Part shown: in pieces, positions 1-46,820 of the stretch
Layout: each line of letters starts with the position of its first letter
Numbering within the stretch: the stretch's first letter is position 1
Source of the DNA: Ophelia neglecta
Lineage: Eukaryota
Assembly (NCBI GenBank): GCA_965285935.1
Contig: OZ260665.1
Coordinates: 41,602,001-41,666,000 of the forward strand
Direction: 5' to 3'
Length of the DNA: 64,000 nucleotides
Translations under genes and position numbers: made by a program
The notes under the pieces: generated by a model
What the model was told of the DNA's origin: nothing
The model's input: only the letters and a program-made list of their open reading frames with translations
The model's database searches: none

Positions 1-1112
1 TGCAGACTCTTGAACATCGCTATGGTGCAGCACTTCATCAGGGGAGGAGTAGTGCCTTTGCCTCTGTTCATCCTGAGGCTCCCCATGCTCATGCACGCCC
101 TCACTGTCATATGACTGGGAGCGTTCTAGCTGATCTTTGTCATGCTCCACAATATCCACAGGAAACTGGTTCTCTTGGCCGATCTGATCAAGACCCGACT
201 CAAACGTCATGTCTATGACTTTTTGTCTGGTTGGGGACCTAGCACTACTAGAGGGTACCTGGGCTTCAGTGTCTAACTCACCGGGCCTCTCCACTCCTGC
301 TTTACCTAGGTCTATGTCTATTGGTTTATCTTTGGTTATAGTGAATGACTTGACTTCATCTACACCAGATGCTTCTTTATACGTTATGAGGCCATCATCT
401 TTCATGTCCTCCCCTTCCCCCTTTTCAGGCCTATCTACGTCTAAGTCATCGTCTTTCTCTCTTTCGTCTATATCTTTCTCCTCAATGCTCACTGCTTCCT
501 TACCCCCGCTGTGTACATACAAATTCTCATAGCTTGAAGATTTGCCATCGGGCATCTGAGAAAGATGACTGTCAACATGTTTTGTATCAAACCGATCTCC
601 AATAGTCTCTGCAGTGATCTCAATTTCATCTGGCTCGTCGCTGGTAAATTGTGTTTCACGGTATATGTCTTCATAGCTTGACGATGACAGCCTATTCTTT
701 TCTTCCAGAGTGGCTTCATGCCCCCCTAACTCTATTGCATCATCAGCAATGACTTCTCCTTGTCTGACATCCAATTGAATTTCATGTTGGAAGTTGTCAG
801 TTTCTATGGACTGTGAGTATGTGTCATGTATCTGTGATTCGGAATATAAATCTTGCTCTGGGGCTTTGCCTTGCAGAGTGATCTTGGGTGGAACCACTGT
901 CAGGTCAGTAAATTGGGAGTCATAGTGATCAGTTAGAACATGCAATGCAGGCTCATCAAAAGAAGGCGGACTAGTTGCTAGTGTGATAGTTGCAGAGGTG
1001 GTAGTAATAGTATGGCATTCAGTTTGGGAAGTAGTAGTATCATCACTGGACAGGCGGGGTGAAGTTAGTGTAGCTGTTGCTGTTTCCACAAAATCACTCT
1101 CAGTGAATCTTT
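1..1112 (-). CDS. ANK: Further large ankyrin exon, truncated by the window edge
   Basis: Acceptor TTTCTACACTAACAG|AA with a CTAAC branch-like motif; phase-1 entry gives ERFTESDFVETATATLTSPRLSSDD... and an acidic frame that appears open to the window edge (no stop, so absent from the ORF track). Confidence 0.82.
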
Positions 1113-1567
1113 CTGTTAGTGTAGAAATTGAATAAAATAGATTAGGACACATGATTGGCATGGTTACTAGAGAACAGGAAGGTAATAGCAAGGTAGAGAA
1201 CTAGATAGAAGGCACAGATGTGGTTAGAACATACTAACAACACTTCAATGTCAAAAGCATTGGATTCTTTCAATAATTCCTGCGTTAACCTCGAAAGTAG
1301 TAACTCAAGATAAATTCTGAATAACTATTTTACAGTTTTGCACATTAAGTAGGATATTATTATTTTTTTGATTATAGTCATCATTCTTTCAGTATATGTA
1401 CACATTTAATTTGCAACTGCAAGAAAAGTTCACTATGTGTCAAGCTGCGAGATAAAATTGATTTAATAGTGGTTTTCAAATTTTATCAAAAGTAGAAATA
1501 TATGAGTATAAGCAATGTATGCTTGTTAGAAAAAATTAATAGCAAAATCAGTCAGTAGGTTTAGTAC

Positions 1568-4500
1568 CTGTAGTTATTGTGGTGGAAGTGGTAGTAGAAA
1601 TGTCATCACTTTGCAAATGTGCAGGGTGAGTAGCAACTGGCAATTCTGGAGACCGGCTAGTGGAATGCATATTAGTAGATGTATCACTGATTATTTCTCC
1701 CATCTCAGGACATTTGGCCAACAAAAAATCTTCCTTTTCAGCTACAGCTGGGTCAATTGGCTCAGGAACAGAGTACACATCTTCTGGCATAATACCACTT
1801 TGAACATTCTGCAGATCTCTGTCATCATCAGTAACAAGCGTGTAGTCTGAGGGAGAAGGAGGTCGGTCTGAACTTGAAACACTAGTCACACTGGCAGCAA
1901 GGGCAGCAGCTTCAATAGACTGCTCAATGAAAATTTGCTGTGATGTGTCAGTACCGAGCCTGCCCTCAGATTCCTGCTCTAGATCAGCCTCCAGGGTATA
2001 GTCTGTGGGAGAAAGGGGACGTCTTCCACATAAAACTCCTTCATCATCGCCAGTAGGACTTACATCCTGAGAATCAAAGTCACTAGGAGGTTTTGAGCCC
2101 CGCTGTGCCTCCAGAGACAAGGAGGCCTCAAGCTTATATTTACGCTTCACAGGTACTTCATCAAAGTTAAAATCATCCTTATATTCTTGAGTCTCGCTTG
2201 CATTATTTGTGTCACTGATAAAAGTAGTCTGTGGCCCTCTTTGCAACTGTACAATAGCTATTTCCTGAAATTCTGCATCTACCTGTCCTGCTTCAATTTC
2301 TGCGGTCTTTTCACGCACTTTTTCCATATCGACATCTCCAGAGTTTTCACTAAAGTATAGTTCATTATCTGTGGGGCTCTGAATAAGTGGACTTGCCTCA
2401 ACAATTGCAATAGATGGGGCAATAAGCCCAGTACTCTGAGAGCCAGACTGAGATGGGGTTTCCTGTCTGGCATGGTCTGTTTCTTCAGTAACAAGAACAG
2501 ATGCAATGTTTTGTGGTTCAGCAACACATTCCTCAGAATAATCAAAATCTGGACTCTTTGACAGTGCAATATCAGAGGCTGATTGTAGGAAAACCTGCAT
2601 TACTGGCTCTTGGAACTCTTGTCTATCACTACTCTCCTGTCTAATCTCAAATTCTGAAATATCAATAAATTCACCATTTTTGTCAAAATTAGTACCATTC
2701 ATTTTAACACCAGAACCACCACCAACTGCTTCGGTTAAAACTTGGCAAGTGGACTCTGCTGCAACACTACCTTGAACACTGTCTTCAGATACTTTACCTA
2801 TTATTACTTGCGTAATATCAATATTTATAGAATCTACTTCACTACCTTCAAATCCAAATTTATCTTTTTCCATTGATTCTGCAATACCCTTTTCTGGTTG
2901 TTCGTCTATTTCTCTACCTATTAAGTCTTTATCAAACACATATATAACGTCTTCTTTGTCAGGCTTATCTAAGTCTTTAAGTGTGTCATTGTAAGGCAGG
3001 TCTTCAACGTCTTCCTGACTTATGTCACCAGTGTCAGATATATCTTCTATTTCTGCCTTTTCTACCAGATCAGATTCCTGGCTCCTCGCTTCTGCATCTT
3101 CGTCAAGGTCATCACATTGGGGTGCTTTCCCGTCTTCCAGTGGGGCCCCATCATCCAATGGAAGTTCTTCTGGCTCCTCCTGTAATCCTTCTGGAGGAGC
3201 CCCATACTCGGCATCATGAAATTCTTCATCCTCATCTTCAATATACACATCCTCGACAGTCTCTTGGAAGTCCTCTAGGCCTTGCTGCTCAGGGTCTTCA
3301 AGACTGGCAGATACGAAATGCTTTTCATCAAATGCAGCTGGTTCCAACGAAACCTTCATTTTGACCTTCTTCTGAGGAACATTTTCCAGTTGTTGAGTGA
3401 CATACTTCTCGAAATCTCCTTGACTGACTTGCACTGGGGTAACATCTGCACCAGATGTCTGGAATGTTTGCTTGCTTGGTTGAGGCTCAGCCAACAAGTG
3501 ATCCTGGGATGCAACAACATATCCTGATGGCTGTTCAACAAAACCAGGTACATAAGCAGGACTTTCCATTACCGTTCGCTCAGTTTTCCGTGACTGCTGA
3601 TTTGTTTTAGTAACTGTTTTTTTAAGAACACTGCCATCTGGTTGGACCTCTTCCACTTCCTCACTGAAAGTCAACGCATGAGGTTCAGTTAATGATGCAT
3701 CAGCATACACTCTCATTTCTGGAGCAATTGCACCAGCCATGGTAACTGGACTTTCATCTTCTGTTTGCGGGCCTTCCATGACAACTCTTTTGATTATTGT
3801 TTGTCTCTGTCTTCTTTTAATTACTTTCCTGATAATAATTCTTCCATCTGGAAGTGTCTCCTCATATTCCTTAATTTCTGTTTCTACCTGCGGCTCCCCT
3901 TCAATAGTATCACTGTATACTCGAATACTAGCTCTTGATGATACAGAGTCAGCAGGAGATACCAATTCACCAGGAGAGGTGAGGGACTGTGCAGGTGACA
4001 AAATTCCCTGGGAGTCACTGAAGCCAGACCGTAGACTTGAAGTTTCAGACATCTCAGATTCAGGAAGTTCTTCAGTTATCACATCTTCAAAAACTTCACC
4101 ATCAGGCCCAACTTTTCTTACTTTTCTAGTTACCATTCTCTTTACTCTAGCTTTGATGAGCTTCCTTCTAACTACAGTGCCATCAGGAAGAATTTCCTCA
4201 ACTTCCTCAAACCCAGCTGATGGACCAAAACATGGGGTTGAAACTTGTTTTGGAGCAACATCAAAAGAAACAGAATCGGCTGGTTTTTCAAATTCATCTC
4301 GGGATTGAGCTGGTGCATCATGCGATGGTAACTCTTCCTTTAAATCAAATCCTTCATGAATATGTGTTTTCTCCAATTGTATTTCATCAACTGGAAGGGC
4401 ACATACTTTCTCTACCTTTAATACTCCAGCAGATTTTTCTTCTGGTGAAACATCAGATGTAGTCTCTGACAGAAGAGAAATACCAATTGTCTTTGTTTCA

Positions 4501-7500
4501 TCCTGAAAAAGAGCAGGTTCTGCACTAGGAAAGATCACAATAGAAGGTTTATCCACTACATCTGAGTTATCTCTTTGCCCTTCATCAACTGCTGGCATAT
4601 TGGCAGACATATCAGGGGAAGGTGTCACCTGTATATCCTCATTTACTGTAAGTTCTGATATTTTGACCACTGGCTCTTCATCAGTTATAATTGGAGCTTC
4701 CTCAACGGCAGGACAGATAGGAGGAGTTGTGTCAAACTCGGTCTCGAATGTCACTTGTATTTTTTCCTCCCGAGGAGTGGCTCCCGTGTCAACAACTGCT
4801 GGAAAGACTGGCTTTTCAGAATCCATTGATTCCAACAGCTCTTCTGATACTTTCGTCAATTCTTCTGACTCCTCAGTCAATTCAGTTTTGAGCACTTCAG
4901 TTGCAGATGAAATTTCAGTTGAGGAATATTGTTGTTCTTGCCTACACATAACAGACTCTGTTCTTTGTTCGTCCTCTAGAATTAATACTCCAGCAGTGAT
5001 ATCAGAGTCTTTGATGATGGCGACGGGTGACTCTGCTCTCACCCCTATAACTATCCCACCATCTATGATTGCCCTGGCAGGCAGTTGTACTGGTGTCGGT
5101 GGTATATCTGCGGGTCTAGCCTCGCACACTGGATAAACAAAGTCGTCAGCAGGGCAGATGAGAGGAGTAGTCTCATACTCGGTCTCAATTTTCTTTTGTA
5201 TTTCTTCCTCTACAGGAGTGAGTTCGGTGTCCAGAACTGCTGGAATAACTGGCTTTTCAGAAACAATTGTTTCAACCAGCTCTTCTGATACTTCCTTTAC
5301 TTCTTCCGACTCTTCAGTTAGTTCAGTTTTGAACACTTCAGTTGAAGATTTAGTGGAAGAATATTGATATTCTTGCTCAGATATTACAGACTTTACTTTT
5401 TGTGTATCCTCCACAATTATCACGCCAGCAGAGATATCAGAGTCTTTGATGACAGTGACGGGTGATGCTGCTCTCACCCCAATAACTATTCCACCATCTA
5501 TGATTGCCCTGGCAGGTATTTCTGCTGGTGACTGTGGTATATACTCGGTTCTATCTTCACACACTGGATGATCAAAGACGTCTGAAGTTTTATCAACTGG
5601 TGCGGTCAACGCTTCCACCTTTACATCTTCAATTGTTGAAAAATCTGTTTCTTTGACAACAGACTCTTCATCAGGCTTAATTGGAGCTTCCACAGCCGCA
5701 GGTGAGATGGGTGGAGGTGTCTCAAAATCTGTCTCGATTGTCACTCGTATGTCTTCCTCTACAGGAGTGGGTTCGGTGTCCAGAACTGCTGGAATAACTG
5801 GCTTTTCAGAAACAATTGTTTCAACCAACTCTTCTGATACTTCCTTTACTTCATCCGACTCTTCAGTAAATTCAGTTTTGAACACTTCGGTCGAAGTTTC
5901 AGTGGAAGAATATTGATATTCTTGCTCAGATATTACAGACTCTACTTTTCGTGTATCCTCCACAATTATCACGCCAGCAGAGATACCAGAGTCTTTGACG
6001 ATAGTGACGGGTGATGCTGCTCTCACCCCAATAACTATTCCACCATCTATGATTGCCCTGGAAGGTATTTCTGCTGGTGACTGTGGTATATCCTCGGTTA
6101 TATCTTCACACACTGGATGATCAGAGACGTCTGAAGCTTTATCAACTGGTGCGGTTAACGCTTCCACCTTTACATCCTCAATTGTTGAAAGTTCAGTTTC
6201 TTTGTCCACAGACTCTTCATCAGGCTTAATTGGAGCTTCCACAACCGCAGGTGAGATGGGTGGAGCTGTCTCAAAATCTGTCTCTATTGTCACTTGTATG
6301 TCTTCCTCTACAGGAATGGGTTCGGTGTCCAGAACTGCTGGAATAACTGGCTTTTCAGCAACAATTGCTTCAACCAGCTCTTCTGATACTTCCTTTACTT
6401 CTTCCGACTCATCAGTAAATTCAGGTTTGAACCCTTCAGTTGAAGTTTCAGTGGAGGAATATTGATATTCTTGCTCAGATATTACAGACTCTACTTTTCG
6501 TGTATCCTCCACAATTATCACGCCAGCAAAGATATCAGAGTCTTTGATGACAGTGACGGGTGATGCTGCTCTCACTCCAATAACTATTCCACCATCTATG
6601 ATTGCCCTGGTAGGTATTTCTGCTGGTGACTGTGGTGTATCCACGGTTATACCTTCACACACTGGATGATCATAGACTGCTGAAGCTTTATCAACTGGTG
6701 CGGTTAACGCTTCCTCCTTTACATCATCCTCAATTGTTGAAAGTTCAGTTTCTTTGACCACAGACTCCTCATCAGGTTTAAGTGGAGCTTCCACAACCGC
6801 TGGTGAGATGGGTGGAGGTGTTTCAAAATCTGTCTTGATTGTCACTTGTATGTCTTCCTCTACTGGAGTGGGTTCGGTGTCCAGAACTGCTGGAATAACT
6901 GGCTTTTCAGAAACAATTGTTTCAACCAACTCTTCTGATACTTCCTTTACTTCTTCGGACTCTTCAGTAAATTTAGTTTTGAACACTTCAGTCGAAGTTT
7001 CAGTGGAAGAATATTGATATTCTTGCTCAGATATTACAGACTCTACTTTTCGTGTATCCTCTACAATTATCACGCCAGCAGAGATATCAGAGTCTTTGAC
7101 GATAGTGACGGGTGATGCTGCTCTCACCCCAATAACTATTCCACCATCTATGATTGCCCTGGCAGGTATTTCTGTTGGTGACTGTGGTGTATCCTCGGTT
7201 ATACCTTCACACACTGGATGATCATAGACTGCTGAAGCTTTATCAACTGGTGCGGTTAACGCTTCCTGCTTTACATCATCCTCAATTGTTGAAAGTTCAG
7301 TTTCTTTGACCACAGACTCCTCATCAGGTTTAAGTGGAGCTTCCACAACCGCTGGTGAGATGGGTGGAGGTGTCTCAAAATCTGTCTTGATTGTCACTTG
7401 TATGTCTTTCTCTACTGGAGTGGGTTCGGTGTCCAGAACTGCTGGAATAACTGGCTTTTCAGAAACAAATGTTTCAACCAACTCTTCTGACACTTCCTTT

Positions 7501-10500
7501 ACTTCTTCCGACTCTTCAGTAAATTCAGTTTTGAACACTTCAGTCGAAGTTTCAGTGGAAGAATATTGATATTCTTGCTCAGATATTACAGACTCTACTT
7601 TTCGTGTATCCTCCACAATTATCACGCCAGCAGAGATATCAGAGTCTTTGACGATAGTGACGGGTGATGCTGCTCTCACCCCAATAATTATTCCACCATC
7701 TATGATTGCCCTGGCAGGTATTTCTGCTGGTGACTGTGGTATATCCTCGGTTATATCTTCACACACTGGATGGTCAGATTCTTTGACCACAGACTCCTCA
7801 TCAGGTTTAAGTGGATCTTCCACAACCGCTGGTGAGATGGGTAGAGATGTCTCAAAATCTGTCTTGATTGTCACTTGCATGTCTTCCTCTACTGGAGTGG
7901 GTTCGGTGTCCAGAACTGCTGGAATAACTGGCTTTTCAGAAACAATTGTTTCAACCAACTCTTCTGATACTTCCTTTACTTTTTCCGACTCTTCAGTAAA
8001 TTCAGTTTTGAACACTTCAGTCGAAGTTTCAGTGGAAGAATATTGATATTCTTGCTCAGATATTACAGACTCTACTTTTCGTGTTTCCTCCACAATTATC
8101 ACGCCAGCAGAGATATCAGAGTCTTTGACGATAGTGACGGGTGATGCTGCTCTCACCCCAATAACTATTCCACCATCTATGATTGCCCTGGCAGGTATTT
8201 CTGCTGGTGACTGTGGTGTATCCTCGGGTATACCTTCACACACTGGATGATCATAGACTGCTGAAGCTTTATCAACTGGTGCGGTTAACGCTTCCTCCTT
8301 TACATCATCCTCAATTGTTGAAAGTTCAGTTTCTTTGACCACAGACTCCTCATCAGGTTTAAGTGGAGCTTCCACAACCGCTGGTGAGATGGTTGGAGGT
8401 GTCTCAAAATCTGTCTTGATTGTCACTTGTATGTCTTCCTCTACTGGAGTGGGTTCGGTGTCCAGAACTGCTGGAATAACTGGCTTTTCAGAAACAATTG
8501 TTTCAACCAACTCTTCTGATACTTCCTTTACTTCTTCCGACTCTTCAGTAAATTCAGTTTTGAACACTTCAGTCGAAGTTTCAGTGGAAGAATATTGATA
8601 TTCTTGCTCAGATATTACAGACTCTACTTTTCGTGTATCCTCCACAATTATCACGCCAGCAGAGATATCAGAGTCTTTGACGATAGTGACGGGTGATGCT
8701 GCTCTCACCCCAATAACTATTCCACCATCTATGATTGCCCTGGCAGGTATTTCTGCTGGTGACTGTGGTATATCCTCGGTTATATCTTCACACACTGGAT
8801 GATCAGAGACGTCTGAAGCTTTATCAACTGGTGCGGTTAACGCTTCCACCTTTACATCCTCAATTGTTGAAAGTTCAGTTTCTTTGTCCACAGACTCTTC
8901 ATCAGGCTTAATTGGAGCTTCCACAACCGCAGGTGAGATGGGTGGAGGTGTCTCAAAATCTGTTTCGATTGTCACTTGTATGTCTTCCTCTACAGGAATG
9001 GGTTCGGTGTCCAGAACTGCTGGAATAACTGGTTTTTCAGAAACAATTGCTTCAACCAGCTCTTCCGATACTTCCTTTACTTCTTCCGACTCATCAGTAA
9101 ATTCAGTTTTGAACACTTCAGTTGAAGTTTCACTGGAGGAATATTGATATTCTTGCTCAGATATTACAGACTCTACTTTTCGTGTACACTCCACAATTAT
9201 CACGCCAGCAGAGATATCAGAGTCTTTGATGACAGTGACGGGTGATGCTGCTCTCACCCCAATAACTATTCCTCCATCTATGATTGCCCTGGCAGGTATT
9301 TCTGCTGGTGACTGTGGTATATCCTCGGTTATACCTTCACACACTGGATGATCATAGACTGCTGAAGCTTTATCAACTGGTGCGGTTAACGCTTCCTGCT
9401 TTACATCCTCAATTGTTGAAATTTCGGTTTCTTTGACCACAGACTCCTCATCAGGTTTAAGTGGAGCTTCCACAACCGCAGGTGAGATGGTAGGAGGTGT
9501 CTCAATATCTCTCTCGATTGTCACTTGTATGTCTTCCTCTACAGGAGTGGGATCGGTGTCCAGAACTGCTGGAATAATTGGCTTTTCAGAAACAATTGTT
9601 TCAACCAACTCTTCTGATACTTCCTTGACTTCATCCGACTCTTCAGTAAATTCAGTTTTGAACACTTCGGTCGAAGTTTCAGTGGAAGAATATTCATATT
9701 CTTGCTCAGATATTACAGACTCTACTTTTCGTGTGTCCTCCACAATTATCACGCCAGCAGAGATATCAGAGTCTTTGACGATAGTGACGGGTGATGCTGC
9801 TCTCACCCCAATAACTATTCCACCATCTATGATTGCCCTGGCAGGTATTTCTGCTGGTGACTGAGGTATATCCTCGGCTATATCTTCACACACTGGGTGA
9901 TCAGAGACGTCTGAAGCTTTATCAACTGGTGCGGTTAATGCTTCCACCTTTACATCCTCAATTGTTGAAAGTTCAGTTTCTTGGTCCACAGACTCTTCAT
10001 CGGGCTTAATTGGAGCTTCCACAACCGCATGTGAGATGGGTGGAGGTGTCTCAAAATCTGTTTCGATTGTCACTGGTATGTCTTCCTCAACAGGAATGGG
10101 TTCGGTGTCCATAACTGCTGGAATAACTGGCTTTTCAGAAACAATTGCTTCAACCAGCTCTTCCGATACTTCCTTTACTTCTTCCGACTCATCAGTAAAT
10201 TCAGTTTTGAACACTTCAGTTGACGTTTCACTGGAGGAATATTGATATTCTTGCTCAGATATTACAGACTCTACTTTTCGTGTATCCTCCACAATTATCA
10301 CGCCAGCAGAGATATCAGAGTCTTTGATGACAGTGACGGGTGATGCTGCTCTCACCCCAATAACTATTCCTCCCTCTATGATTGCCCTGGCAGGTATTTC
10401 TGCTGGTGACTGTGGTATATCCTCGGTTATACCTTCACCCACTGGATGATCATAGACTGCTGAAGCTATATCAACTGGTGCGGTTAACGCTTCCTGCTTT

Positions 10501-19500: not shown

Positions 19501-20383
19501 TCATCAATGAGTTGGTTTCGCCTGTCAATCGATGCATGCGCACTCGTAATATTATCCTTAATCATTGCTCTGGCACCTTGTTCGTCTAATACTAATACAT
19601 CCGTTGTTTGATTCAAAGCAACCAGTGAACAAAATTCGTCTTCATCAAGATCTAACAATTCGTCCTCCTGTAGCCTCAATGTAGGTGTAATGACCTCTCT
19701 GGAATGAGCTGACTGTTCAATTACTAGCAGGTCAATGTCAGTGGTGCCTGGGCTGGCAAGTTTTGCTGTTTCTGATTTAGTTACATTTGAAACTTCTTCA
19801 TCAATGTGAATTTCACTTATTTCAGGTACTGTCATGTCATTTGGTTTTTGTACAAAAGACACCTGGGGTGGTTGGAACACAAAAGAAGGGTCAGATACTG
19901 ATGTTTCTGTAATGGGTGACTCTTTTTCCATTACATGAAGTTCAGGACTCCACTTTTGTTGATCATTAACCCCCGCTTGTGTAGGTAATTCTGTTACCTG
20001 TTCTGGCTTGGCATGAAACAATTCAGCGGAATTGTCAAATTCCTCAGCACGACCGTGTTCAAGTTCCATTCTAGGTTCAGATTTCATTTCAACAATGCTT
20101 TTTTCAACTAAAGCTAAAAATTCATCTTCAGACATTTTACTCACATCTTCCTCAACCACTGGGGCATATTCTGTGCTTTCTACAGGAGGCTCATGATCCT
20201 GACTCTCAAACCTCAATATCAATTTGGTAGCATTTTTGTCTTCCACTAACCTAACCTGGTCCTGTCTAATAATTTCTTTATCTGGGGTTAAAAAAATCCT
20301 ATCTGGGCTTTCACTGTGTGCTCTTTCTTCAAAATGTGTCACTAGAGCAGAAACTGGAATTTGGATATCTTCAGCAGGTTTAC
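1568..20383 (-). CDS. ANK: Giant exon C (18,816 bp, about 6,272 aa); alternative in-frame acceptor at 20593 possible
   Basis: Lies inside ORF 1548..20555; acceptor TTTGTATACAG|GT, donor ACAG|GTACTA; phase 1-1. Confidence 0.87.
4650..17560 (-). repeat. Coding tandem array, about 24 x 549 bp (183 aa), acidic and Pro/Ser/Thr-rich
   Basis: The anchor ARAIIDGGIVIGVRAASPV recurs 24 times; spacing is mostly 549 bp, with 552, 540, 477 and 435 bp variants, all multiples of 3. Confidence 0.95.
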
Positions 20384-21208
20384 CTGTATACAAATAGACA
20401 TGTTTTTTTCCATCCCAATGGTCAATTCCCAATGGAGATTGCATGAAAGAAAAGCAGAACAGAATACACATTAGGAAAGTGTCAGATATTAAAAAGATCC
20501 CGAAGAACAAACCAAAGGCACAAACCAAAGCAAACTCAAGCATCTGAGGAAGCAAAGCTAAGAAGGCAAGGGAATCACAGCAAAAAAAAAATACTGGGAA
20601 GAAGAAAGTGTAAAAGAGAAGATAGGAAGTAGATGGATCTCACAATTTATTTATATGGTATTTACCAATGAAAATTCACGTACAATACATATGTCTTTTA
20701 TTTATTTCAGACAAAACAATCTGGCATCTAACGAAGAGCCTGAGGGAAATTGGTCATATCAGAAATCAGTGTTCAAGTGTTGCAGCAATATATAAATGAA
20801 GGATAAAACACCCATTAGTATGGTAGGCTAATAGTTGGATGGCTCTTTGTTAGTTCTGCAGGGGAAGCAGCACAGCTGCATCTGCACATAAACACATGCA
20901 TAAGTTCAATTGGAAATTGGTTACTATGGTGGTGGCCTGAAACATTTGGTGGCTTCTTCTGTTTACAACAATGATTGCACCTCATGTTCTTTTCAAATAG
21001 GTCTCAAAAGCAGCAAACACGGATCACTATGGGAGGCTGACCTTGCAAATAAGTGCCCTTAAGAGATATTCAACATGCATCTAGAAGTCACTGGATAACA
21101 ATGAAAGTCAACATTTGTAATTCGGATTAGTGTAAACAATGGAAATTCGTCATTATGTAAAAGAAACATTAGTTGTATTTCCATGCTGTAGAATATATAG
21201 GAGTCTAC

Positions 21209-22722: not shown

Positions 22723-22785
22723 CTTGTTGTTCTCTTTCTAGGCCCAGATCATCGTCAAATGGTTGGTCATCTCCATACCGAGGTG
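22723..22785 (-). CDS. ANK: Small cassette exon
   Basis: Acceptor TAAACAG|, donor AAG|GTAAAT; 63 bp, phase 1-1; APRYGDDQPFDDDLGLEREQQ. Confidence 0.78.
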
Positions 22786-36400: not shown

Positions 36401-39400
36401 TCTATCTCTCCCTCTTCTGGGTGGAGGATCTTATCCTTTACCGGTTGAGAGTGGCTGACAGTTGTGACCTTGGTTGTTACTACAGTGCCATCTTCAAGTG
36501 TCTCCACATTGTCCTGCACATCTTCACTGGTGGTCACTGGACCGGTTTCTTTCTCTATCACTACTGGACCGGTTAACATAGAAGTAGATGTAGTTGTGGT
36601 TTTCTTTATCCACGTTCCATCTGGCAAGCCTTGTTCTGACTCAGATGTGCTGATTTTTGTTGATATATTTGGGATATTGGTATCTGTGATACCTACAGGA
36701 ATTTCAGTTATCTCTTCTTCTATTTCCTTTCCAACCAATGATTCCTTCTCTTGGATTGTATCTTTGCCATCTTTATCCACTATCTCAGTAACTGGCTGAA
36801 TATGAGAGATTGTGGTCACTTTAGTCTTGATATGAGTTTTAAGAACGCCGGCTTCAACAATATCTTCACTCTCCTGAACATCAGTCTTGGTTATGACATC
36901 TCCTTTTGTCACTTGCAAAAGTTTCTCAGAATCTACAGGAATCGACAATGGTTCTTGTGGAAGGAATTCTGCCTCAATACCTTCAACAGTCACCTTCTGT
37001 TCAGATTCAACAGGAGGTGCCTGTGCTCCAACCACCTTGACTGTTGTGGATTTGACTTGCTTTTTGACCCACGTACCATCGGGTAGGGTTTCTTCCAAGT
37101 CCTTTATAGCAACCTCTGTGGCCAGATCGTCCCCCTCAACACTACTCACACCTGCTGGTAAGGAAGTGATCTCTTCAAGGATTTCGGCTCCCAATGTTTG
37201 CTCTACAACATTGCTGGTTGGTTGTCCATCCACTACCAGGTGCTCAGTAACTTCTTGGACATGTGTTGTGGTAGTGATTCTGGTGTTGACAGTTGTTCCA
37301 TCATCCAATGACTCGGTTTTCTCCTGAACATCAGTTTTAGTGGTCACTGGGCCCATTTCTCTTTCTACTGGCTGAACCTGTTCCACTGGTTGAGGGCCCA
37401 CTATGGATGTGCTTGTCCGGGTAACGACACTCTTTATCCAGGATCCATCCGGCAATGACTCCTCACTTTCTTGGACTGAGGTTTTGGTGGCTAGGTTAGG
37501 ACCTGTTATGTCCGTGACTCCAGCTGGTACTTCACTGATATCAGTCTTGATGTCCTTGCCAACTACAAAGACTGTTTCATTTTCTATCTCTCCCTCTTCT
37601 GGGTGGAGGATCTTTTCCTTTACCGGTTGAGAGTGGCTGACAGTTGTGACCTTGGTTGTTACTACAGTGCCATCTTCAAGTGTCTCCACATTGTCCTGCA
37701 CATCTTCACTGGTGGTCACTGGACCCGTTTGTTTCTCTATCACTACAGGACCGGTTAACGTAGAAGTAGATATAGTTGTGGTTTTCTTTATCCAAGTACC
37801 ATCTGGCAAGCCTTGTTCTGACTCAGATGTGCTGATTTTTGTTGATATATTTGGGATATTGGTATCTGTGATACCTACAGGAATTTCAGTTATCTCTTCT
37901 TCTATTTCCTTTCCAACCAATGATTCCTTCTCTTGGATTGTATCTTTGCCATCTTTATCCACTATCTCGGTAACTGGCTGAATATGAGAGATTGTGGTCA
38001 CTTTAGTCTTGATATGAGTTTTAAGAACGCCGGCTTCAACAATATCTTCACTCTCCTGAACATCAGTCTTGGTTATGACATCTCCTTTTGTCACTTGCAA
38101 AAGTTTCTCAGAATCTACAGGAATCGACAATGGTTCTTGTGGAAGGAATTCTGCCTCAATACCTTCAACAGTCACCTTCTGTTCAGATTCAACAGGAGGT
38201 GCCTGTGCTCCAACCACCTTGACTGTTGTGGATTTGACTTGCTTTTTGACCCACGTACCATCGGGTAGGGTTTCTTCCAAGTCCTTTATAGCAACCTCTG
38301 TGGCCAGATCGTCCCCCTCAACACTACTCACACCTGCTGGTAAGGAAGTGATCTCTTCAAGGATTTCGGCTCCCAATGTTTGCTCTACAACATTGCTGGT
38401 TGGTTGTCCATCCACTACCAGGTGCTCAGTAACTTCTTGGACATGTGTTGTAGTAGTGATTCTGGTGTTGACAGTTGTTCCATCATCCAATGACTCGGTT
38501 TTCTCCTGAACATCAGTTTTAGTGGTCACTGGTCCTAATTCCTTTTCAGGTTGTAAATTATCTACCAATGTCTTTACTGTTTTAGTTGTTGTTTTCTTCA
38601 GCCATGTTTCGTCAGGAAGGATTTCTTCTGATTCCTGTACTGACATTTTTGAAGACAAATTTGCATCGACAGTATCAACAAGTTCAGCTGGAAGCTCTGT
38701 TATGTCCTCCATGATTTCCTGGCCAAGCACCTCTTCATGTTCTACGAACGTTTGCTCGCCTGCTACAATAATTGATTCAGTAACTGGTTGTATATGAGTG
38801 ATGGTTGTTAATTTTCTCTTAACTAACGTGCCATCAGACAAAACTCGCTCACTCTCTTCAACAGCTGTCCTTGTTAATATATCTCCTTTGGTAAGTTTTA
38901 ACTCCTTACAAGGCTCTGGAAGCGTAGCCAGCTGGTGTTCAGGGAAGTCAGAAGAAATGGATTCTACACCACAAACTTGCTGTACCAATTCATCAGGTGG
39001 TGAAGTTGTTCCAATCGTACGAACTACAACTTTACTTACATGTCGTTTTTCCCACGTCCCATCAGAAAGAGTTTGTTCCGAATCATGCTCGGATTGCTCT
39101 GTTTCTAAATTAGCACCAAATGGGCCGCTCACACCTTGAGGAAGGACCAATATATCTTCTTTTACTTCAGTGCCAAGAATCTTCTTAGACTCGCGAATAG
39201 ATTCTTCCTTTCCTTGCATAGTTCGCTCAGACAGCGGAATGAAATGAGTGGTTGTTGTTATGGTCACCTTAACTGTTGTCCCGTCAGGTAAAACTTCTTC
39301 TTTATCCTTAACTGTGGTCATTGTCGTCGGCTCTCCTTCTACAATTTCAGTTTTTGCCGGCGGTATTAGACTTTTTTCATCTCGATCAATAAGCATTTGA

Positions 39401-39491
39401 TCCTGTTTCATCATCTCTTCTTGAATCACTTCTTCCAGCGTCGGGGTTTTTTCCCTGTAATCTTCTTCGCCGGGAGTAGTTTGCCCAAAAC
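24495..39491 (-). CDS. ANK: Giant exon B (14,997 bp, about 4,999 aa)
   Basis: Contains ORF 24490..39429; acceptor TATTTCAG|GT is in frame, donor ACAG|GTTAGG; phase 1-1. Confidence 0.88.
25580..38540 (-). repeat. Coding tandem array, 11 x 1,182 bp (394 aa), near-identical copies; each unit contains 3 sub-modules
   Basis: Antisense shadow ORFs recur at exactly 1,182-bp spacing (26249, 27431 ... 38069); only a few substitutions per copy. Confidence 0.96.
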
Positions 39492-40193: not shown

Positions 40194-43100
40194 CTTGGCA
40201 ACCTTCATCTGGTGCAGCATGAACTGCTGAGTCTTCCTGCCTAAGAAGACGTTCCACTGCAGACACAACAGTTGTTGTCATAGTTTTCTTTTCCCATGTT
40301 CCATCAGGGCGCGTTTGTTCAGATTCTTGAACGGACACTTTTACATCAAGATTATCTCCTTCGGGCGAGTGTAAACCCTCTGGTAATTGCGTCACCTCTT
40401 CCAGAACTTCAGTGCCTAATATCTGTTCTGACTCATTAACAGTTTCAATACCATCACTTATCGTTTTTTCTATGATTGGTTTGTAATGGGTGACAGTAGT
40501 AGTTTTAGTTTTAACGGTGGTTCCATCATCCAGTGCCTCCTCACTTTCCTTCGTGTCTGTCCTTGTAGTCACTTCACCTTCTATCACTTCTGTTTTTGCC
40601 TCGGGTTCTTTCAATGTTAGTTCCTGTTCAATTTCTCTCGGTGCACCTATGTCATCTGCCATTAGTTGAATAGGTACTTCTTCGACGTTCGCTACTTTTT
40701 GATTAAGTTCCACGTGCGGTTCATCTGTTTGCACCTTTTTAACAGATGTTGTTTTAACTGTTTTCTTTGCCCATGTTCCATCAGGGAGAGTTTGCTCAGA
40801 ATCTTGAACGGACACTTTTACTTCCAAATTGTCTCCTTCCGAGGAATGGACGCCCTCGGGCAATTCTGTGACTTCCTCCAGTATGTCAGTGCCTACAATG
40901 TGGTCAACTTTATTGATTGTTTCAATACCATCTATACTGGTAATTTCAATAACTGGCTTATAGTAGGTCAGAGTAGTGGTCTTGGTCTTAAGAGTGGTAC
41001 CATCATCGAGTACCTCCTCGCTGTCTTTAGTGTCAGTCTTAGTGGTCACCTCTCCTTCTATCACTTCTGTCTTGGTCTCGGGTTCTTTCAAAGTCAGATC
41101 CTGTTCAATTTCTTTGGGTGTACTAATTTCATTAGCCGTAAGTTGACTAGGTTCTTCTTCGATTTGTGATATTTTTTGATCAAGTTTCACTGCCGGTTCA
41201 ACTGACTGCACCTTTTTAACAGTGGTTGTTTTCACCGTTTTCCTTATCCATATTCCATCAGAAAGAGTTTGTTCCGAGTCTTGAACAGACACTTTTACAT
41301 CCAGATTATCTCCTTCTGGAGAGAGTACATCCTCCGGTAATTCAGTTACTTCTTCCACGACCTCTGTGCCTAATACTTGTTCTGATTCATTAACAGTTTC
41401 TATTCCGTCACTAGTCGTTTTTTCTATAATTGGTTTGTAATGGGTGACAATAGTAGTTTTAGTTTTGACAGTGGTTCCATCATCAAGTACCTCCTCACTT
41501 TCCTTCGTGTCAGTCCTTGTGGTCACTTCTCCTTTTATCACTTCTGTCTTGGCCTCGGGTTCTTTAAAAGTAAGTTCTTGTTCAATTTCTCTCGGTGCAC
41601 TTATGTCGTCTTTCGTTAGTTGAATAGGTTCTTCCTTAACTTGTATTTTCTGCTCAAGTTCATCTGGCGGTTCACCTGTTTGCACCTTTTCACAAGTGGT
41701 TGTTTTTACTGTTTTTCTTATCCATGTTCCATCAGGGAGAGTTTGTTCCGAGTCTTGCACGGACACTTTAACATCCAAATTATCTACATCTTGAGAGAGT
41801 ACACCCTCCGGCAATTCAGCCACCTCTTCCAGAACTTCGGTGCCTACAACTTGTTCTGACTCATTGACAGTTTCAATACCATAACTAGTCGTTTTTTCCA
41901 CGATTGGTTTGTAATGGGTGACAGTAGTAGTTTTGGTTTTGACAGTGGTTCCATCATCCAGTAAGTCGTCACTTTCTTTAATATCAGTCCTTGTGGTCAC
42001 TTCTCCTTTTATCACTTCTGTTTTGATTTCAGGTTCTTTCAAAGATATTTCCTGTTCAATTTCTCTGGGTGCATTAATTTCATCTGCCGTTAGTTGAATG
42101 GGTAGTTCTTCGACCTGTGCTACATTTTGACCAAGATCCACTACGGGTTCCACTTCGTGCACCTTTTCAACAGTGGTTGTTTTAACAGTTTTTCTTGTCC
42201 ATGTTCCATCAGGCAGAGTTTGTTCCGAGTCTTGAACGGACACTTTTACATCCAGATTATCTCCTTCGGGGGAGTGGGTACCCTCCGGTAATTTAGTCAC
42301 CTCTTCTAGAACCTCTGTGCCTAAAATTTGCTCTGATTCATTCTCAGTTTCAATGCCGTCACTAGTCGTTTTTTCTATGATTGGTTTGTAATGGGTGACA
42401 ATAGTAGATTTAGTTTTGACGGTGGTTCCATCATCCAGTACCTCGTCACTTTCCTTCGTGTCAGTCCTTGTTGTAACATCTCCCTCTATCACTTCAGTCT
42501 TGATCTCCGGTTCTTTCAAAGATATTTCCTGTTCAATTTCTTTGGGTGAACTAATTTCATCCGCTATTCGTTGACTAGGTACTTCTTCGCCTTGAGCTAC
42601 TTTTTGATCAGGTTCCGCTGATGGTTCAAATATTTGCCCCTTTTTAACAGTGGTTGTTTTAACCGTTTTCCTTGTCCATGTTCCATCAGGGAGAGTCTGT
42701 TCAGAATCTTGAACTGACACTTTTACATCAAGATTATCTCCTTCGGGCGAGTGTAAACCCTCTGGTAAATATGTCACCTCTTCCAGAACTTCAGTGCCTA
42801 ATACTTGTTCTGATTCATTAACAGTTTCAATACCATCACTAATCGTTTTTTCTAAGACTGGTTTGTAATGGGTGATAGTGGTAGTTTTGGTTTTGACAGT
42901 GGTTCCATCAGCCAGTAAATCCTCACTTTCTTTAGTATCAGTCCTTGTGGTCACTTCTCCTTCTATCACTTCTGTCTTGACCTTGGGTTCTTTCAAAGTA
43001 TGTTCCTGTTCAGTTTCTCTAGGTGAACTTATGTCATCTGCCATTAATTGAATAGGTACTTCTTCGATCTGTGCTACTTGTTGATCAAGTTCACCTTGCG

Positions 43101-46100
43101 GTTCATCTATTTGCACCTTTTTAACAGTGCTTGTTTTAACTGTTTTCCTTGACCATGTTCCATCAGGGAGAGTTTGTTCCGAGTCTTGCACGGACACCTT
43201 TACTTGCACATTATCAACATCTGGAGAGAGTATGCCCTCCGGTAATTCGGTCACCTCTTCTAGAATCTCTGTGCCCACTACTTTTTCTGATTCATTGGCA
43301 GTTTCAATACCACCACTAATGGTCTTTTCTATAATTGGTTTGTAATGGGTGACAGTAGTAGTTTTGGTTTTGACAGTGGTTCCATCATCCAGTAAGTCCT
43401 CTCTTTCTTTAGTATCAGTCCTTGTGGTCACGTCTCCCTCCATCACATCAGTCTTGGTCTCGGATTCTTTCAAAGATATTTCCTGTTCGATTTCTTTGGG
43501 TGCACAGATTTCTTCTGCCTTTAGTTGAATGGGTACTTCATCGACTTGTGCTACTTTCTGCTCCAGTTCCACTGGTGGTTCTACTGCCTGCACCTTTTTA
43601 ACAGTGGATGTTTTCACTGTTTTCCTTGACCATGTACCATCCGGGAGAGTTTGGTCAGACTCTTGCACGGACACTTTTACATCAAGATTATCTCCTTCGG
43701 TGGAGTGGATACCCTCTGATAATTCAATCACATCTTCCAGAACTTCTGTGCCTAATACTTGTTCTGATTCATTAACAGTTTCAATACCATCACTAATCGT
43801 TTTTTCATTGATTGGTTTGTAATGTGTGACAATAGTAGTTTTAGTTTTAACGGTGGTTCCATCATCTAGTACCTCCTCACTTTCCTTCGTGTCTGTCCTT
43901 GTGGTCACTTCTCCTTCTATCACTTCTGTCTTGGCCTCTGGTTCTTTCAAAGTGAGTTCCTGTTCAATTTCTCTTGGTGCACCTATGTCTTCTGCCATTA
44001 GTTGAATAGCTTCTTCTTCGATGTGTGCTACTTTTTGATCAAGTTCCACATGCGGTTCATCTGTTTGCACCTTTTTAACAATGGTTGTTTTAACCGTTCT
44101 TCTCGACCATGTTCCATCAGGGAGAGTTTGTTCTGAGTCTTGCACAGACACTTTCACTTCCACATTATCCATATCTGGAGAGTGTATACCCTCCGGTAAT
44201 TCAGTCACCTCTTCCAGAACTTCGGTGCCTACAACTTGTTCAGATTCATTCTCAGTTTCAATACCATCACTAATCTTTTTTTCTATAATTGGTTTGTAAT
44301 GGGTGACAGTAGTAGTTTTGGTTTTGACAGTGGTTCCATCATCCAGTAAGTCCTCTCTTTCTTTAGTATCAGTCCTTGTGGTAACATCTCCCTCTACCAC
44401 TTCTGTCTTGGCCTCGGGTTCTTTCAAAGATATTCCCAGTTCAATTTCTTTGGGTGCACCCATTTCTTCTGCCGTTAGTTGAATGGGTATTTCTTCGACT
44501 TGTGCTACTTTCTGTTCAAATTCCACTGGTGGTTCAACTGTGTGCATTTTTTTAACAGTGGTTGTTTTCACTGTTTTCTTTGACCATGTACCATCAGGGA
44601 GAGTTTGTTCAGACTCTTGTACGGACACCTTTACATCCAGCTTTTCTCCTTCGGGGGATTGGATACCCTCTGGTAATTCAGTCACCTCTTCCAGAACTTC
44701 GCTGCCTAATACTTGTTCAGATTCATTGACAGTTTCAATACCATCACTAATCTTTTTTTCTATGATTGGTTTGTAATGGGTGACAGTAGTAGTTTTGGTT
44801 TTGACAGTGGTTCCATCAGCCAGTAAATTCTCACTTTCTTTAATATCAGTCCTTGTGGTCACTTCTCCAATCACTTCTGTCTTGACCTCGGGTTCTTTAA
44901 AATATATTTCCTGTTCGATTTCTTTGGGTGCACTTGTGTCATCTGCAATTAGTTGTATAGTTTCTTCTTCGATGTGTGCTACTTTTTTATCTAGTTCCAC
45001 AGGCGGTTCAACTCTTTGCACCTTTTTAACAGTGGTTGTTTTGACCGTTTTCCTTGTCCATGTTTCATCAGGGAGAGTTTGTTCAGACTCTTGCACGGAC
45101 ACTTTCACTTCAACATTATCAACGTCTGGAGAGTGTATGCCCTCCGGTAATTCAGTCACCTCTTCTAGAATCTCTGTGCCTAATACTTGTTCTGATTCAT
45201 TGGCAGTTTCAATGCCTTCACTAGTTGTTTTTTCTACAATTGGTTTGTAATGGGTGACAGTAGTAGTTTTGGTTTTGACAGTGGTTCCATCATTCAGTAA
45301 ATCTTCACTTTCTTTAGTATCAGTTCTTGTGGTCACATCTCCTTCTATCACTTCTGTCTTGGCCTTGGGTTCTTTTACAAATATTTCCTTTTTAATTTCT
45401 CTAGGTGCACTTATTTCGTCTGCCACTAGTTGAATGGGTACTTCTTCGACCTGTGCTTCTTTCTGCTCAAGTTCATCTGGCGGTTCAACTGTGTGCATTT
45501 TTTTAACAGTGGTTGTTTTCACTTTTTTCCTTGTCCATGTTCCATCAGGAAGAGCTTGTTCTGAGTCTACAACGGACATTTTTACATCCAGATTATCTCC
45601 TTCCGGGGAGTGTATACCTACAGGTAATTCAGTCACCTCTTCAAGAATCTCTTGGCCTAAAACTTTGTCTGATTCATTGAGAGTTTCAATACCATCACTT
45701 ATCGTTTTTTCTACGATTGATTTATAATGGGTGACAGTGGTAGTTTTAGTTTTGACAGTAGTGCCATCATCCAGTACCTCCTCACTTTCTTTAGTATCAG
45801 TCTTTGTGGTCACCACTCCTTCTATTACTTCTGTCTTTGCCTCAGTTTGGGGTTTCATCGTTACAGCGGTAGTTCTTACAGCCTTTTTTACCCATGTTCC
45901 ATTTGCAAGTGTCTCCTCTGTTTCTTGAACAGTGGATTTTACTTCAAGATTGTCCCCGGTGGTGTCTGTAACTCCTTCTGGTAACTCCACTCTTTCTTCT
46001 AGTATTTCTTTTCCAAGGAATAATTCCTCTGTCTTTTCCGTTTCTTGTCCATCTAATGTGGTCGATGTTGTAATTGGTTGAAAGTAGTTAATTATTGTAC

Positions 46101-46820
46101 ATTTTGACTTTACTTTCGTTCCATTATCAAGGATATTTTCGGTTTCTTTTATCTCTGATTTTGTAACTATTTCGCCTTGGGAAACTTTACTCGTAGTTAC
46201 AGGACTTTGAAGCAAAGTTTCTTTCTTCAGTGTAGCGTAAATTGTTTTGACTGTTCTTCTTAGGTAAGACCCATTGCTTTGTACAGTTTCAGACGTTTCT
46301 GCCTCACATTCGTCTCTTTCAAGTTCTTCCAGATTTTCAAAAGAGACCCCAGCCGGCACATAAGTAATCTCTTCCTGGATGTCTGTGCCTATTAGTACTT
46401 CTTCAATGATATTGGAACTTTCTTCTATCCCATCAATGAATACTTTCTCAATATGTGGTTCAATGTGTGAAATAGTAGTCACTTTGGTTATAACGGTAGT
46501 GCCATCTTGTTGGGTTTGTTTATTTTCAGTTACACTACATTTATCTTGGATTGGTGCTTTTATAATATCCTTAGTCACTGCTGGTGGTTTTGTAGGAGGG
46601 ACAATTTCAGTTATGTCAGATTCTAGGATATGATCTGGAACAGTTTCAGAGTACACCATTTCAACAGGTTCTGCGGTTTGGGGGACACTAATCTTGTCAA
46701 CTAGTTCTTGTTCTATTCCAGTTGGGCTAACAGTGTCATAGCTTTCCTGAAATGTTCCCCTGTCTGGGTGTTCAGGGGTTGGAGTAAGTTCCCTGTCTTC
46801 TTCTGACGGAGAACCTCTTT
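40194..46820 (-). CDS. ANK: Giant exon A (6,627 bp, about 2,209 aa), E/T/V/K-rich repeats
   Basis: Lies inside ORF 40117..46911; acceptor ATTTCCAG|AA, donor CAAG|GTAGGA; phase 1-1. Confidence 0.88.
40260..45845 (-). repeat. Coding tandem array, 12 x 477 bp (159 aa), moderately diverged
   Basis: The THYKP anchor recurs every 474-477 bp from about 40483 to 45724; two further diverged modules extend to about 46550. Confidence 0.92.

What the first reader, a model, noticed from the sequence alone, without database searches (positions are those of the whole stretch)
1..46820. Titin-scale giant ankyrin with three separate giant exons after the death domain
Seen: three open exons of 6.6, 15.0 and 18.8 kb (40,440 bp, 13,480 codons) plus a fourth large exon leaving the window, all in frame with the ZU5/UPA/DD exons. 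Total in-window CDS is about 43.7 kb (about 14,550 aa), before adding the upstream ANK repeats and ZU5 domains. Known: vertebrate giant AnkG/AnkB use a single long exon before the DD, whereas Drosophila Ank2-L/XL and C. elegans UNC-44L use long exons after the DD and organise axons and microtubules. Inference: a lineage-specific giant ankyrin of more than 15,000 aa (over 1.6 MDa) if all exons are co-included, probably larger than the characterised giant ankyrins.
Basis: partly seen in the sequence, partly recalled or inferred. Interest (0 to 1): 0.9.

Follow-up and report, generated by a model that had tools for sequence, protein, structure and literature searches.

The report
Multi-giant-exon ankyrin gene, splicing untested
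An invertebrate (annelid- or mollusc-type) ankyrin gene carries five very long, frame-compatible coding exons after its death domain. Joined together they would make an ankyrin of about 2 MDa, larger than any described, but no RNA data exist to show which exons are actually joined.

Summary
On the minus strand, behind ANK, ZU5, UPA and death-domain exons, lie stop-free exons of 6,627 nt (A), 14,997 nt (B) and 18,816 nt (C). A fifth long exon (E, 10,404 nt) lies just outside the window.

With four micro-exons, these nine exons all have AG/GT borders and are all phase 1-1. They sum to 17,434 codons (1.91 MDa).

They are real coding sequence. Repeat units are multiples of three with dN/dS 0.30-0.64. 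A related species keeps the order B-C-D-E, with amino-acid change far below saturated synonymous change and with conserved splice borders.

A, B and C hold 52 copies of a ~115-residue module that AlphaFold2 predicts confidently as all-beta, with no known fold match. The 183-residue unit of C is predicted disordered.

Co-inclusion could not be tested, because no RNA run exists for this organism. A strongly conserved intron in front of exon C, and the fly precedent of alternative L and XL isoforms, suggest regulated rather than obligatory inclusion.

Verdict: a new variant of the known protostome giant ankyrin. Its "titin scale" remains potential only. Other agents of this scan noted other giant exons elsewhere in this genome.

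The parts
62386..63052 (-). UPA domain, split over two exons (Pfam-matched parts 62897-63052 and 62386-62628)
   Evidence: Pfam UPA_2, E 1e-22 and 6.9e-27
61889..62095 (-). Death-domain exon 1 (207 nt, phase 1-1)
   Evidence: Pfam Death, E 5.4e-11; AG/GT borders
61325..61453 (-). Death-domain exon 2 (129 nt, phase 1-1)
   Evidence: Borders read. The translation continues the death domain, but Pfam gave no hit on this half alone.
49574..60068 (-). Zone of small post-death-domain exons leading to exon A. Most are phase 1-1: x2 60068..59853, x3 56962..56795, x4 about 55686..55578, x5 from 54817, x6 52109..52017, x7 49642..49574.
   Evidence: Canonical sites and phases. Peptides at x4, x5 and x6 are conserved in a distant relative, L015. 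These borders are sequence-only models.
40194..46820 (-). Long exon A, 6,627 nt, phase 1-1. It holds 14 DGT beta-modules; the 159-aa unit array spans about 40283-45843.
   Evidence: dN/dS among units is 0.30.
24495..39491 (-). Long exon B, 14,997 nt, phase 1-1. It holds 35 DGT modules arranged as about 11 super-units of 394 aa (array about 25581-38553, 98.8% DNA identity), then a conserved ankyrin-type end block.
   Evidence: The tail is conserved in L014 at 49% aa identity, ending ...PKTG in both species.
22723..22785 (-). Micro-exon s0 (63 nt, phase 1-1)
   Evidence: weak counterpart in L014
21798..21908 (-). Micro-exon s1 (111 nt, phase 1-1)
   Evidence: 78% DNA identity with L014
21209..21277 (-). 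Micro-exon s2 (69 nt, phase 1-1)
20384..21208 (-). Conserved intron in front of exon C (825 nt). Candidate splicing-control region, or the 3' UTR of an isoform that ends before exon C.
   Evidence: Identity with L014 is 63% overall and 79% in the last 176 nt, with exact runs of 16-22 nt and two conserved TGCATG. The C-D intron aligned the same way gives 43%.
1568..20383 (-). Long exon C, 18,816 nt, phase 1-1. It comprises a unique head with 2 DGT modules, 22 units of 183 aa (array about 5150-17399, 94.5% DNA identity), and a unique tail holding a second end block.
   Evidence: The head and tail are conserved in L014 at 53-58% aa identity, but the array is not.
1..1112 (-). Exon D. Its in-window part is shown here; the whole exon runs 1112..-18 (1,131 nt, phase 1-1). 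Outside the window follow micro-exon s3 (-491..-574) and long exon E (-1236..-11639, 10,404 nt, non-repetitive).
   Evidence: D and E are conserved in L014 (47% and 43-61% aa identity). Homologues of E occur in many assemblies.

Best explanation
This is the canonical (ANK - ZU5 - UPA - death domain) ankyrin gene of a lophotrochozoan, probably an annelid. Its region after the death domain has grown into a train of phase-1 cassette exons. Five of them are long: A 6.6 kb, B 15.0 kb, C 18.8 kb, D 1.1 kb and E 10.4 kb.

Shown here:
- The exons are genuine, selected coding sequence.
- Their donors and acceptors are conserved, so they are spliced onward as internal exons.
- Any combination of them keeps the reading frame.

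Inferred:
- The gene makes a family of giant, very acidic (pI about 4) isoforms by regulated inclusion. A decision point lies at the B/C boundary.
- The N-terminal core anchors the protein to membrane proteins and spectrin.
- The C-terminal giant part projects into the cytoplasm as a spacer and linker to microtubules, as in fly Ank2-L/XL and worm UNC-44L.
- In A and B this part is a chain of about 50 folded beta-modules. In C and E it is disordered acidic sequence.

An all-inclusive isoform of about 19,000-20,000 aa (about 2.1 MDa) is possible but unproven.
For: Gene identity:
- UPA and Death domains by Pfam.
- ANK exons upstream and the best ZU5 hit of the genome, 7-9 kb upstream on the same strand.
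- In a distant relative one genomic ORF runs from the UPA domain straight into about 12 DGT modules and the end block (P0067).
- A Helobdella 'Ankyrin UPA domain-containing protein' carries the end block.

Coding:
- ORFs of 2,268-6,363 codons in one frame only.
- Repeat units are multiples of 3, with dN/dS of 0.30 (A), 0.41 (B) and 0.64 (C).
- Against the L014 orthologues, pN is 0.22-0.25 while pS is saturated at 0.65-0.77.
- Genomic contigs from public runs of a single sample, possibly the assembly's own source, match 19600-25500 without indels.

Internal exons, any combination in frame:
- All nine exons have AG/GT borders and are phase 1-1.
- Borders are conserved in L014 and L017 (PKTG, DKGSY, RG|STN). 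The C donor and D acceptor are conserved within an otherwise unalignable intron.
- The order B-s1-s2-C-D-E is kept in L014.

Regulated use:
- The intron before C is conserved at 63% overall and 79% near the acceptor, against 43% for the control intron. It holds two conserved TGCATG.
- Fly Ank2-L and Ank2-XL are alternative isoforms (PMC6703079).

Modules:
- 52 near-full DGT modules.
- The AlphaFold2 model has pLDDT above 90 over residues 1-116.
- The C unit has pLDDT 45.

Known frame of reference: long exons after the death domain in protostomes (PMC5135030).
Against: - There is no transcript evidence of any kind for this organism or a close relative. Every junction is a sequence-based model.
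- The function (spacer, microtubule linker, neuronal expression) is carried over from fly, worm and vertebrate work and is not tested here.
- The intron conservation could equally reflect a 3' UTR of a shorter isoform or an unrelated element.
- The array copy numbers of B (98.8% identical units) and C rest on one assembly.
- The fold prediction uses an alignment of paralogous repeats from three species only.
Confidence: 0.6

Rival explanations
1. One reading: all long exons are co-included as a rule. The main neuronal product would then be one titin-scale ankyrin of about 19,000-20,000 aa (about 2.1 MDa), larger than fly Ank2-XL.
For: - All nine exons share phase 1 and have conserved canonical sites.
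- Introns between them are short: 455-825 nt, and 2.6 kb after B.
- No conserved poly(A) hexamer follows the C donor.
- The same exon order is kept in a relative.
Against: - No RNA data.
- Phase symmetry also makes every exon skippable.
- The constrained intron before exon C is typical of regulated exons.
- The two fly long exons mark alternative isoforms.
- Read-through of each donor meets a stop within 1-25 codons for A, B, C, D and the micro-exons, so terminal use is also possible.
Confidence: 0.27
2. The long frames belong to one or more separate genes downstream of ankyrin on the same strand and are not spliced to it.
For: No RNA links them to the death-domain exons. Exon E has no ankyrin-specific motif (one search gave no Pfam hits in the long exons).
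Against: - Each frame begins at an acceptor, not at a start codon with upstream stops cleared by a promoter-like region.
- Their phase matches the post-death-domain exons.
- DGT modules and the end block are in one ORF with UPA in P0067, and in a Helobdella ankyrin model.
- C shares modules and the end block with B.
Confidence: 0.04
3. The repeat arrays are non-coding tandem repeats (or assembly-inflated copies) that are open only because one open unit was copied.
For: Units of B are 98.8% and units of C 94.5% identical at DNA level. At that identity, openness of the arrays alone says little. The C unit has no homologue in relatives and no predicted fold.
Against: - Unit lengths are 477, 1,182 and 549 nt, all multiples of 3.
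- dN/dS is below 1 in all three arrays, and third-position excess is clear in A.
- The non-repetitive heads, tails and exon E are themselves 1,000-3,468 codons long and conserved.
- The DGT module is conserved across distant species.
Confidence: 0.03

Closest known systems
Drosophila Ank2 (Ank2-L 450 kDa, Ank2-XL 1,200 kDa)
   Same: - Canonical ankyrin core followed by long exons downstream of the death domain.
- More than one long exon.
- One exon built of a long array of tandem repeats, thought to act as a spacer and microtubule organiser in axons (PMC5135030 S4 table; PMC6703079).
   Different: - Fly has two long exons (27,804 and 5,132 bp). Here there are five, summing to 52 kb.
- Fly repeats are 76 aa. 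Here the units are 159, 394 and 183 aa.
- There is no sequence similarity.
- The fly isoforms are documented by RNA and protein and are alternative. Here nothing is known about usage.
C. elegans UNC-44 large isoform
   Same: A long exon (14,974 bp) after the death domain, with acidic, Thr/Val/Glu-rich tandem repeats.
   Different: Worm has a single long exon with short repeats (27 and 60 aa). Here there are several long exons and a much larger predicted folded module.
Aplysia and Lottia ankyrins (Jegla et al. 2016)
   Same: Lophotrochozoan ankyrins with one or two long exons (7,569 + 6,560 bp; 6,818 bp) downstream of the death domain. Exon E here, which is non-repetitive and widely conserved with a named Nucella lapillus homologue, may correspond to that ancestral long exon. 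That link is an inference.
   Different: Those genes have at most two long exons with repeats of 24-32 aa. The DGT-module exons and the 183-aa array are not described there.
Vertebrate giant ankyrin-G (480 kDa) and ankyrin-B (440 kDa)
   Same: The same gene family and the same principle: a neuron-specific long exon adds an extended tail to the ankyrin core.
   Different: The vertebrate long exon lies upstream of the death domain, is single (6-8 kb), and has few or no repeats.
Titin, twitchin and obscurin-type modular giants (analogy only)
   Same: Exons A and B would give a long chain of about 50 small beta-rich modules, as in modular elastic or ruler proteins.
   Different: The module is not an Ig or FN3 domain. 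No Pfam, PDB sequence or fold match was found. There is no evidence of muscle expression.

Membership tests
Canonical ankyrin (ANK1/2/3, Ank2, UNC-44 family) | N-terminal array of ANK repeats | tested here: met
   ANK repeat exons on the same strand at window-equivalent 83549-83989 and 85378-85779, Pfam Ank E 4.6e-41 and 1.2e-27. The full count of 24 repeats was not checked.
Canonical ankyrin (ANK1/2/3, Ank2, UNC-44 family) | ZU5-ZU5-UPA spectrin-binding cassette | tested here: met
   UPA_2 in two exons. ZU5 at window-equivalent 71090-71317, E 9.8e-20, the best ZU5 hit in the genome. The second ZU5 was not looked for separately.
Canonical ankyrin (ANK1/2/3, Ank2, UNC-44 family) | Death domain after UPA | tested here: met
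   Pfam Death, E 5.4e-11, in the exon 62095..61889
Giant ankyrin, protostome type (long exon downstream of the death domain) | One or more exons of several kb, downstream of the death domain, in frame through canonical splice sites | tested here: met
   Exons A, B, C and E (6.6-18.8 kb), all AG/GT and phase 1-1, compatible with the post-death-domain exons
Giant ankyrin, protostome type (long exon downstream of the death domain) | Long-exon polypeptide enriched in Glu and Ser, acidic, low complexity (Jegla et al. 2016) | tested here: met
   Glu is 13-16% in all long exons. Ser is 9-13% in C and E. A and B are instead Thr/Val/Glu-rich. pI is 4.1-4.4.
Giant ankyrin, protostome type (long exon downstream of the death domain) | Transcripts that join the long exon(s) to the ankyrin core | not testable with these tools
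   No RNA run for the organism. The runs found are genomic DNA. No spliced model appeared among the returned protein hits. Indirect support: UPA and DGT modules lie in one ORF in P0067.
Giant ankyrin, protostome type (long exon downstream of the death domain) | Neuronal or axonal expression and microtubule or membrane-skeleton organising function | not testable with these tools
   Carried over from fly, worm and vertebrate literature. No data for this organism.
Titin-like modular giant (Ig/FN3 chain) | Tandem Ig or FN3 domains | tested here: not met
   No Pfam domain in the long exons. The module model has no Ig/FN3 match. The best PDB Z is 4.9, below background.

The most novel reading that the evidence does not exclude
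One transcript joins all nine phase-1 exons (A, B, s0-s2, C, D, s3, E) to the ankyrin core. The product would be an ankyrin of about 19,000-20,000 aa and about 2.1 MDa, roughly twice fly Ank2-XL. Its first 7,200 residues after the core would form a rod or spring of about 50 tandem beta-modules of a fold not yet seen in solved structures, followed by some 10,000 residues of acidic disordered spacer. It would be the largest membrane-skeleton adaptor known, and a molecular ruler between the plasma membrane and deep axonal or muscle cytoskeleton.
Probability: 0.25. Interest if true: 0.72.

Novelty: new variant of a known kind. Interest (0 to 1): 0.5.

Why it matters
Giant ankyrins organise axons (initial segment, calibre, microtubule spacing). 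Their long exons are thought to be fast-evolving, mostly disordered inserts, at most two per gene and up to 33 kb in total (PMC5135030).

This locus, and the related loci found here in other unannotated assemblies, goes further:
- Single ORFs in relatives reach 6,954, 7,263 and 10,191 aa.
- In lophotrochozoans the tail has grown to at least five long exons and 52 kb.
- Part of it is built from a conserved module that is predicted to fold, not from disordered sequence.

If the exons are co-expressed, this sets a new size class for membrane-skeleton adaptors and offers a natural series of 'ruler lengths' across species. If they are alternative, it is an unusually rich system of isoform choice with clearly conserved intronic control regions.

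Either way, such genes are likely to be badly mis-annotated, as separate 'hypothetical proteins', in new invertebrate genomes.

Tried and rejected
- RNA evidence. The look-up of sequencing runs (kind rna) found no RNA run. The three runs listed are genomic contigs covering exons and introns alike, with no joints. They show that other contigs of the same species, from one sample that may be the assembly's own source, agree over 19600-25500. They say nothing about splicing.
- Spliced models. The representative search and three word-index searches returned almost only single-ORF gene calls on unannotated ENA, Logan and JGI contigs. Those I tested by Pfam lacked ANK, ZU5 and Death domains, apart from two with a UPA domain. 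Logan contigs that might have been transcripts (L017, L019, L020) are genomic, with ORFs separated by short introns.
- P0014 (6,954 aa) could not be placed on its contig because of the 5,000-residue limit.
- Taxon. The ESM Atlas gave no usable hit for the UPA exon. The organism stays coded. Only Helobdella (annelid) and Nucella (mollusc) names appear among distant homologues.
- Fold of the DGT module. Foldseek PDB (best E 0.01, TM about 0.2), VIA-align wide (best Z 4.9, below the usual background of 7-8; G5 domains only Z 3.0-3.1), Atlas (TM 0.50 to an unnamed cluster) and a PDB sequence profile (no hit). No known fold can be assigned. This does not prove the fold is new.
- The 183-aa unit of exon C. 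No homologue in relatives by BLAST or HMM and no confident structure.
- Poly(A) hexamers after donors. Present in several introns, and not conserved in the one intron I checked against L014, the C-D intron. Uninformative.
- Fused long exons in relatives, which would prove co-translation. None was found among 163 fetched proteins.
All searches were exon by exon, by reference.


Full report
**1. The observation**

The window holds three enormous stop-free frames on the minus strand: 40120-46923 (2,268 codons), 24493-39543 (5,017) and 1551-20639 (6,363). A fourth frame of 400 codons leaves the window at base 1. Nothing else in six frames exceeds 258 codons. At 42% G+C I estimate that chance would give about 150 codons.

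I read the borders directly. A is 46820..40194, B is 39491..24495, C is 20383..1568 and D starts at 1112. Each has an AG acceptor behind a pyrimidine tract and a GT donor of the form AG|GT(A/T)(A/G). Each exon starts at codon position 2 and ends at codon position 1 (phase 1-1).

**2. The gene**

- Pfam finds UPA_2 in two exons at 62.4-63.1 kb and Death at 61.9-62.1 kb.
- I located the window in its assembly (C8:41602001-41666000) and fetched the flanks.
- Upstream on the same strand lie ANK-repeat exons and the genome's best ZU5 match. This is therefore a canonical ankyrin.
- The exons after the death domain that I could model (DD1, DD2, x2, x3, x4, x6, x7) are also phase 1-1. The alternative pair x1 (1-0) plus a short form of x2 (0-1) restores the phase. 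A frame-consistent path from the death domain into exon A therefore exists.

**3. Beyond the window**

- Exon D is short (1112..-18, 1,131 nt).
- It is followed by an 84-nt micro-exon (s3).
- Then comes a fifth long exon, E (-1236..-11639, 10,404 nt). E is non-repetitive and rich in Glu, Ser and Asp, and it too has a phase-1 donor.
- Between B and C lie three micro-exons: s0 63 nt, s1 111 nt and s2 69 nt.
- All nine exons from A to E are phase 1-1 and free of stops. They sum to 52,302 nt = 17,434 codons = 1.91 MDa, with pI 4.1-4.4.

**4. Are the exons coding?**

Repeat structure:

| Exon | Unit | Copies | DNA identity between units |
|---|---|---|---|
| A | 159 aa | about 12 | not calculated |
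| B | 394-aa super-unit | about 11 | 98.8% |
| C | 183 aa | 22 | 94.5% |

- All unit lengths are multiples of three.
- Among copies, dN/dS is 0.30 (A, pS 0.34), 0.41 (B) and 0.64 (C).
- A contig of a related species (L014, ENA assembly) carries the tail of B, then s1, s2, a 4,124-codon C, D and E in the same order. Amino-acid identity is 43-61%.
- In alignable blocks pN is 0.22-0.25, while synonymous sites are saturated at pS 0.65-0.77.
- Exon ends coincide in the two species...PKTG...DKGSY, and in L017 ...RG|STN.
- In the otherwise unalignable C-D intron (43% identity) only the donor and the branch/acceptor region are conserved. The long exons therefore behave as internal exons that are spliced onward.
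- Genomic contigs from three public runs of one sample, possibly the assembly's own source, cover 19600-25500 colinearly with a few SNPs and no indels.

**5. What the exons encode**

- An HMM of the A unit finds 52 near-full copies of a ~115-residue module: 14 in A, 35 in B and 3 in C.
- Its consensus is two half-motifs of the type E-x-L-(P/D)-D-G-T-x-V-K-x-x-T-T-T.
- The same module fills long ORFs in other assemblies. These include single ORFs of 6,954 and 7,263 aa and, next to a 3,493-aa module exon, an ORF of 10,191 aa.
- In one distant relative a single genomic ORF runs from the second half of the UPA domain through about 12 modules to the end block (P0067).
- A Helobdella robusta protein named 'Ankyrin UPA domain-containing protein' carries the end block. 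This ties the modules to ankyrin without needing RNA.
- AlphaFold2, on 45 units from three species, gives pLDDT above 90 for residues 1-116: five long beta-strands forming hairpins. The 45-residue linker of the A unit is disordered.
- No PDB or Atlas match rises above background.
- The 183-aa unit of C has no homologue in relatives and no confident model.
- The heads and tails of C are conserved, and the tail contains a paralogue of B's end block.
- Exon E has homologues with matching start and end in many assemblies. One is named from the mollusc Nucella lapillus.

**6. Are the exons joined?**

No RNA run exists, the runs found are DNA, and the protein searches returned no spliced model of this gene or a close relative.

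Sequence features cut both ways.

For co-inclusion:
- Uniform phase.
- Conserved canonical sites.
- Short introns (455-825 nt, and 2.6 kb after B).

For regulated or partial use:
- Every exon is skippable.
- Donor read-through reaches a stop within 1-25 codons for all but E.
- Above all, the 825-nt intron before exon C is 63% identical to L014, and 79% over the last 176 nt. That is more than the flanking exons, in a species pair whose synonymous sites are saturated. It has exact runs of 16-22 nt and two conserved TGCATG.
- Read-through of the s2 donor gives a short peptide with a shared ILQHG core and an early stop in both species. An isoform ending before C, with this stretch as its 3' UTR, is also conceivable.
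- In Drosophila, the only characterised ankyrin with two long exons, Ank2-L (450 kDa) and Ank2-XL (1,200 kDa) are alternative isoforms (PMC6703079).

**7. Comparison with what is known**

Jegla et al. 2016 (PMC5135030) showed the following:
- Giant ankyrins occur in all bilaterian phyla.
- Long exons lie after the death domain in protostomes.
- There are at most two long exons per gene.
- Mean long-exon length is 8.1 kb.
- The largest case is fly, at 27,804 + 5,132 bp.
- Repeats are 12-76 aa.

The present gene fits the family on every feature I could test. It differs in the number of long exons (five), total length (52 kb), unit size (159-394 aa) and the presence of a module predicted to fold.

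The largest single exon here (18.8 kb) is smaller than the fly XL exon. A record-size protein therefore requires at least B and C together.

**8. Verdict**

- Observation confirmed.
- Interpretation partly supported.
- It is a new variant of the protostome giant ankyrin, and the layout is clade-wide rather than unique to this genome.
- My estimates are about 0.25-0.3 for an all-inclusive titin-scale isoform and about 0.5 for some isoform above 10,000 aa.

Notes by other agents of this scan (untested by me) report other 19-kb exons in a kinesin and beside TDRKH in the same genome, and also found no RNA. Long acidic exons seem to be a habit of this genome.

Noticed in passing
window 20384-21208 (minus strand): The intron between micro-exon s2 and exon C is conserved with a species whose synonymous sites are saturated. 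Identity is 63% overall and 79% in the last 176 nt, with exact runs of 16-22 nt. It holds two conserved TGCATG (Rbfox-type) motifs at 21079 and 20900. It could be a splicing-control region for the 18.8-kb exon, or the 3' UTR of an isoform ending after s2.
   Followed up: partly
window 40249-46569 and 24800-39354 (minus strand); L014:248-3052; L015:10235-19465: The ~115-residue 'DGT' module (52 copies here) is predicted with pLDDT above 90 as a long-hairpin all-beta unit. It has no Pfam family and no convincing PDB or Atlas fold match. It is shared by unannotated annelid- and mollusc-type assemblies and would merit its own family definition.
   Followed up: partly
L015:24904-30482 (ENA ERZ21939214 contig): In a more distant relative, a 3,493-aa module exon is followed 4.4 kb downstream by a single called ORF of 10,191 aa (about 30.6 kb). 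That is longer than the fly XL exon. Its first 1,873 residues show a 26-aa periodicity and no similarity to exon C here.
   Followed up: partly
window-equivalent -992 to -1064 (outside window, upstream of exon E acceptor): A 73-nt block conserved with L014 (76%) lies 170-250 nt before the acceptor of exon E. It has stops in the phase-1 frame, so it is more likely an intronic element or a poison exon than a coding exon.
   Followed up: no
window 53172-54082: A 30-bp tandem repeat (about 30 copies, 79% matches) sits in an intron of the post-death-domain region. It creates the longest plus-strand ORFs of the window (242-258 codons). It is probably a plain minisatellite.
   Followed up: no
window 24429-24494 (minus strand): About 65 nt of intron directly after the donor of exon B are conserved with L014 (part of a 90-nt block at 76%). 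This is again typical of a regulated exon border.
   Followed up: no
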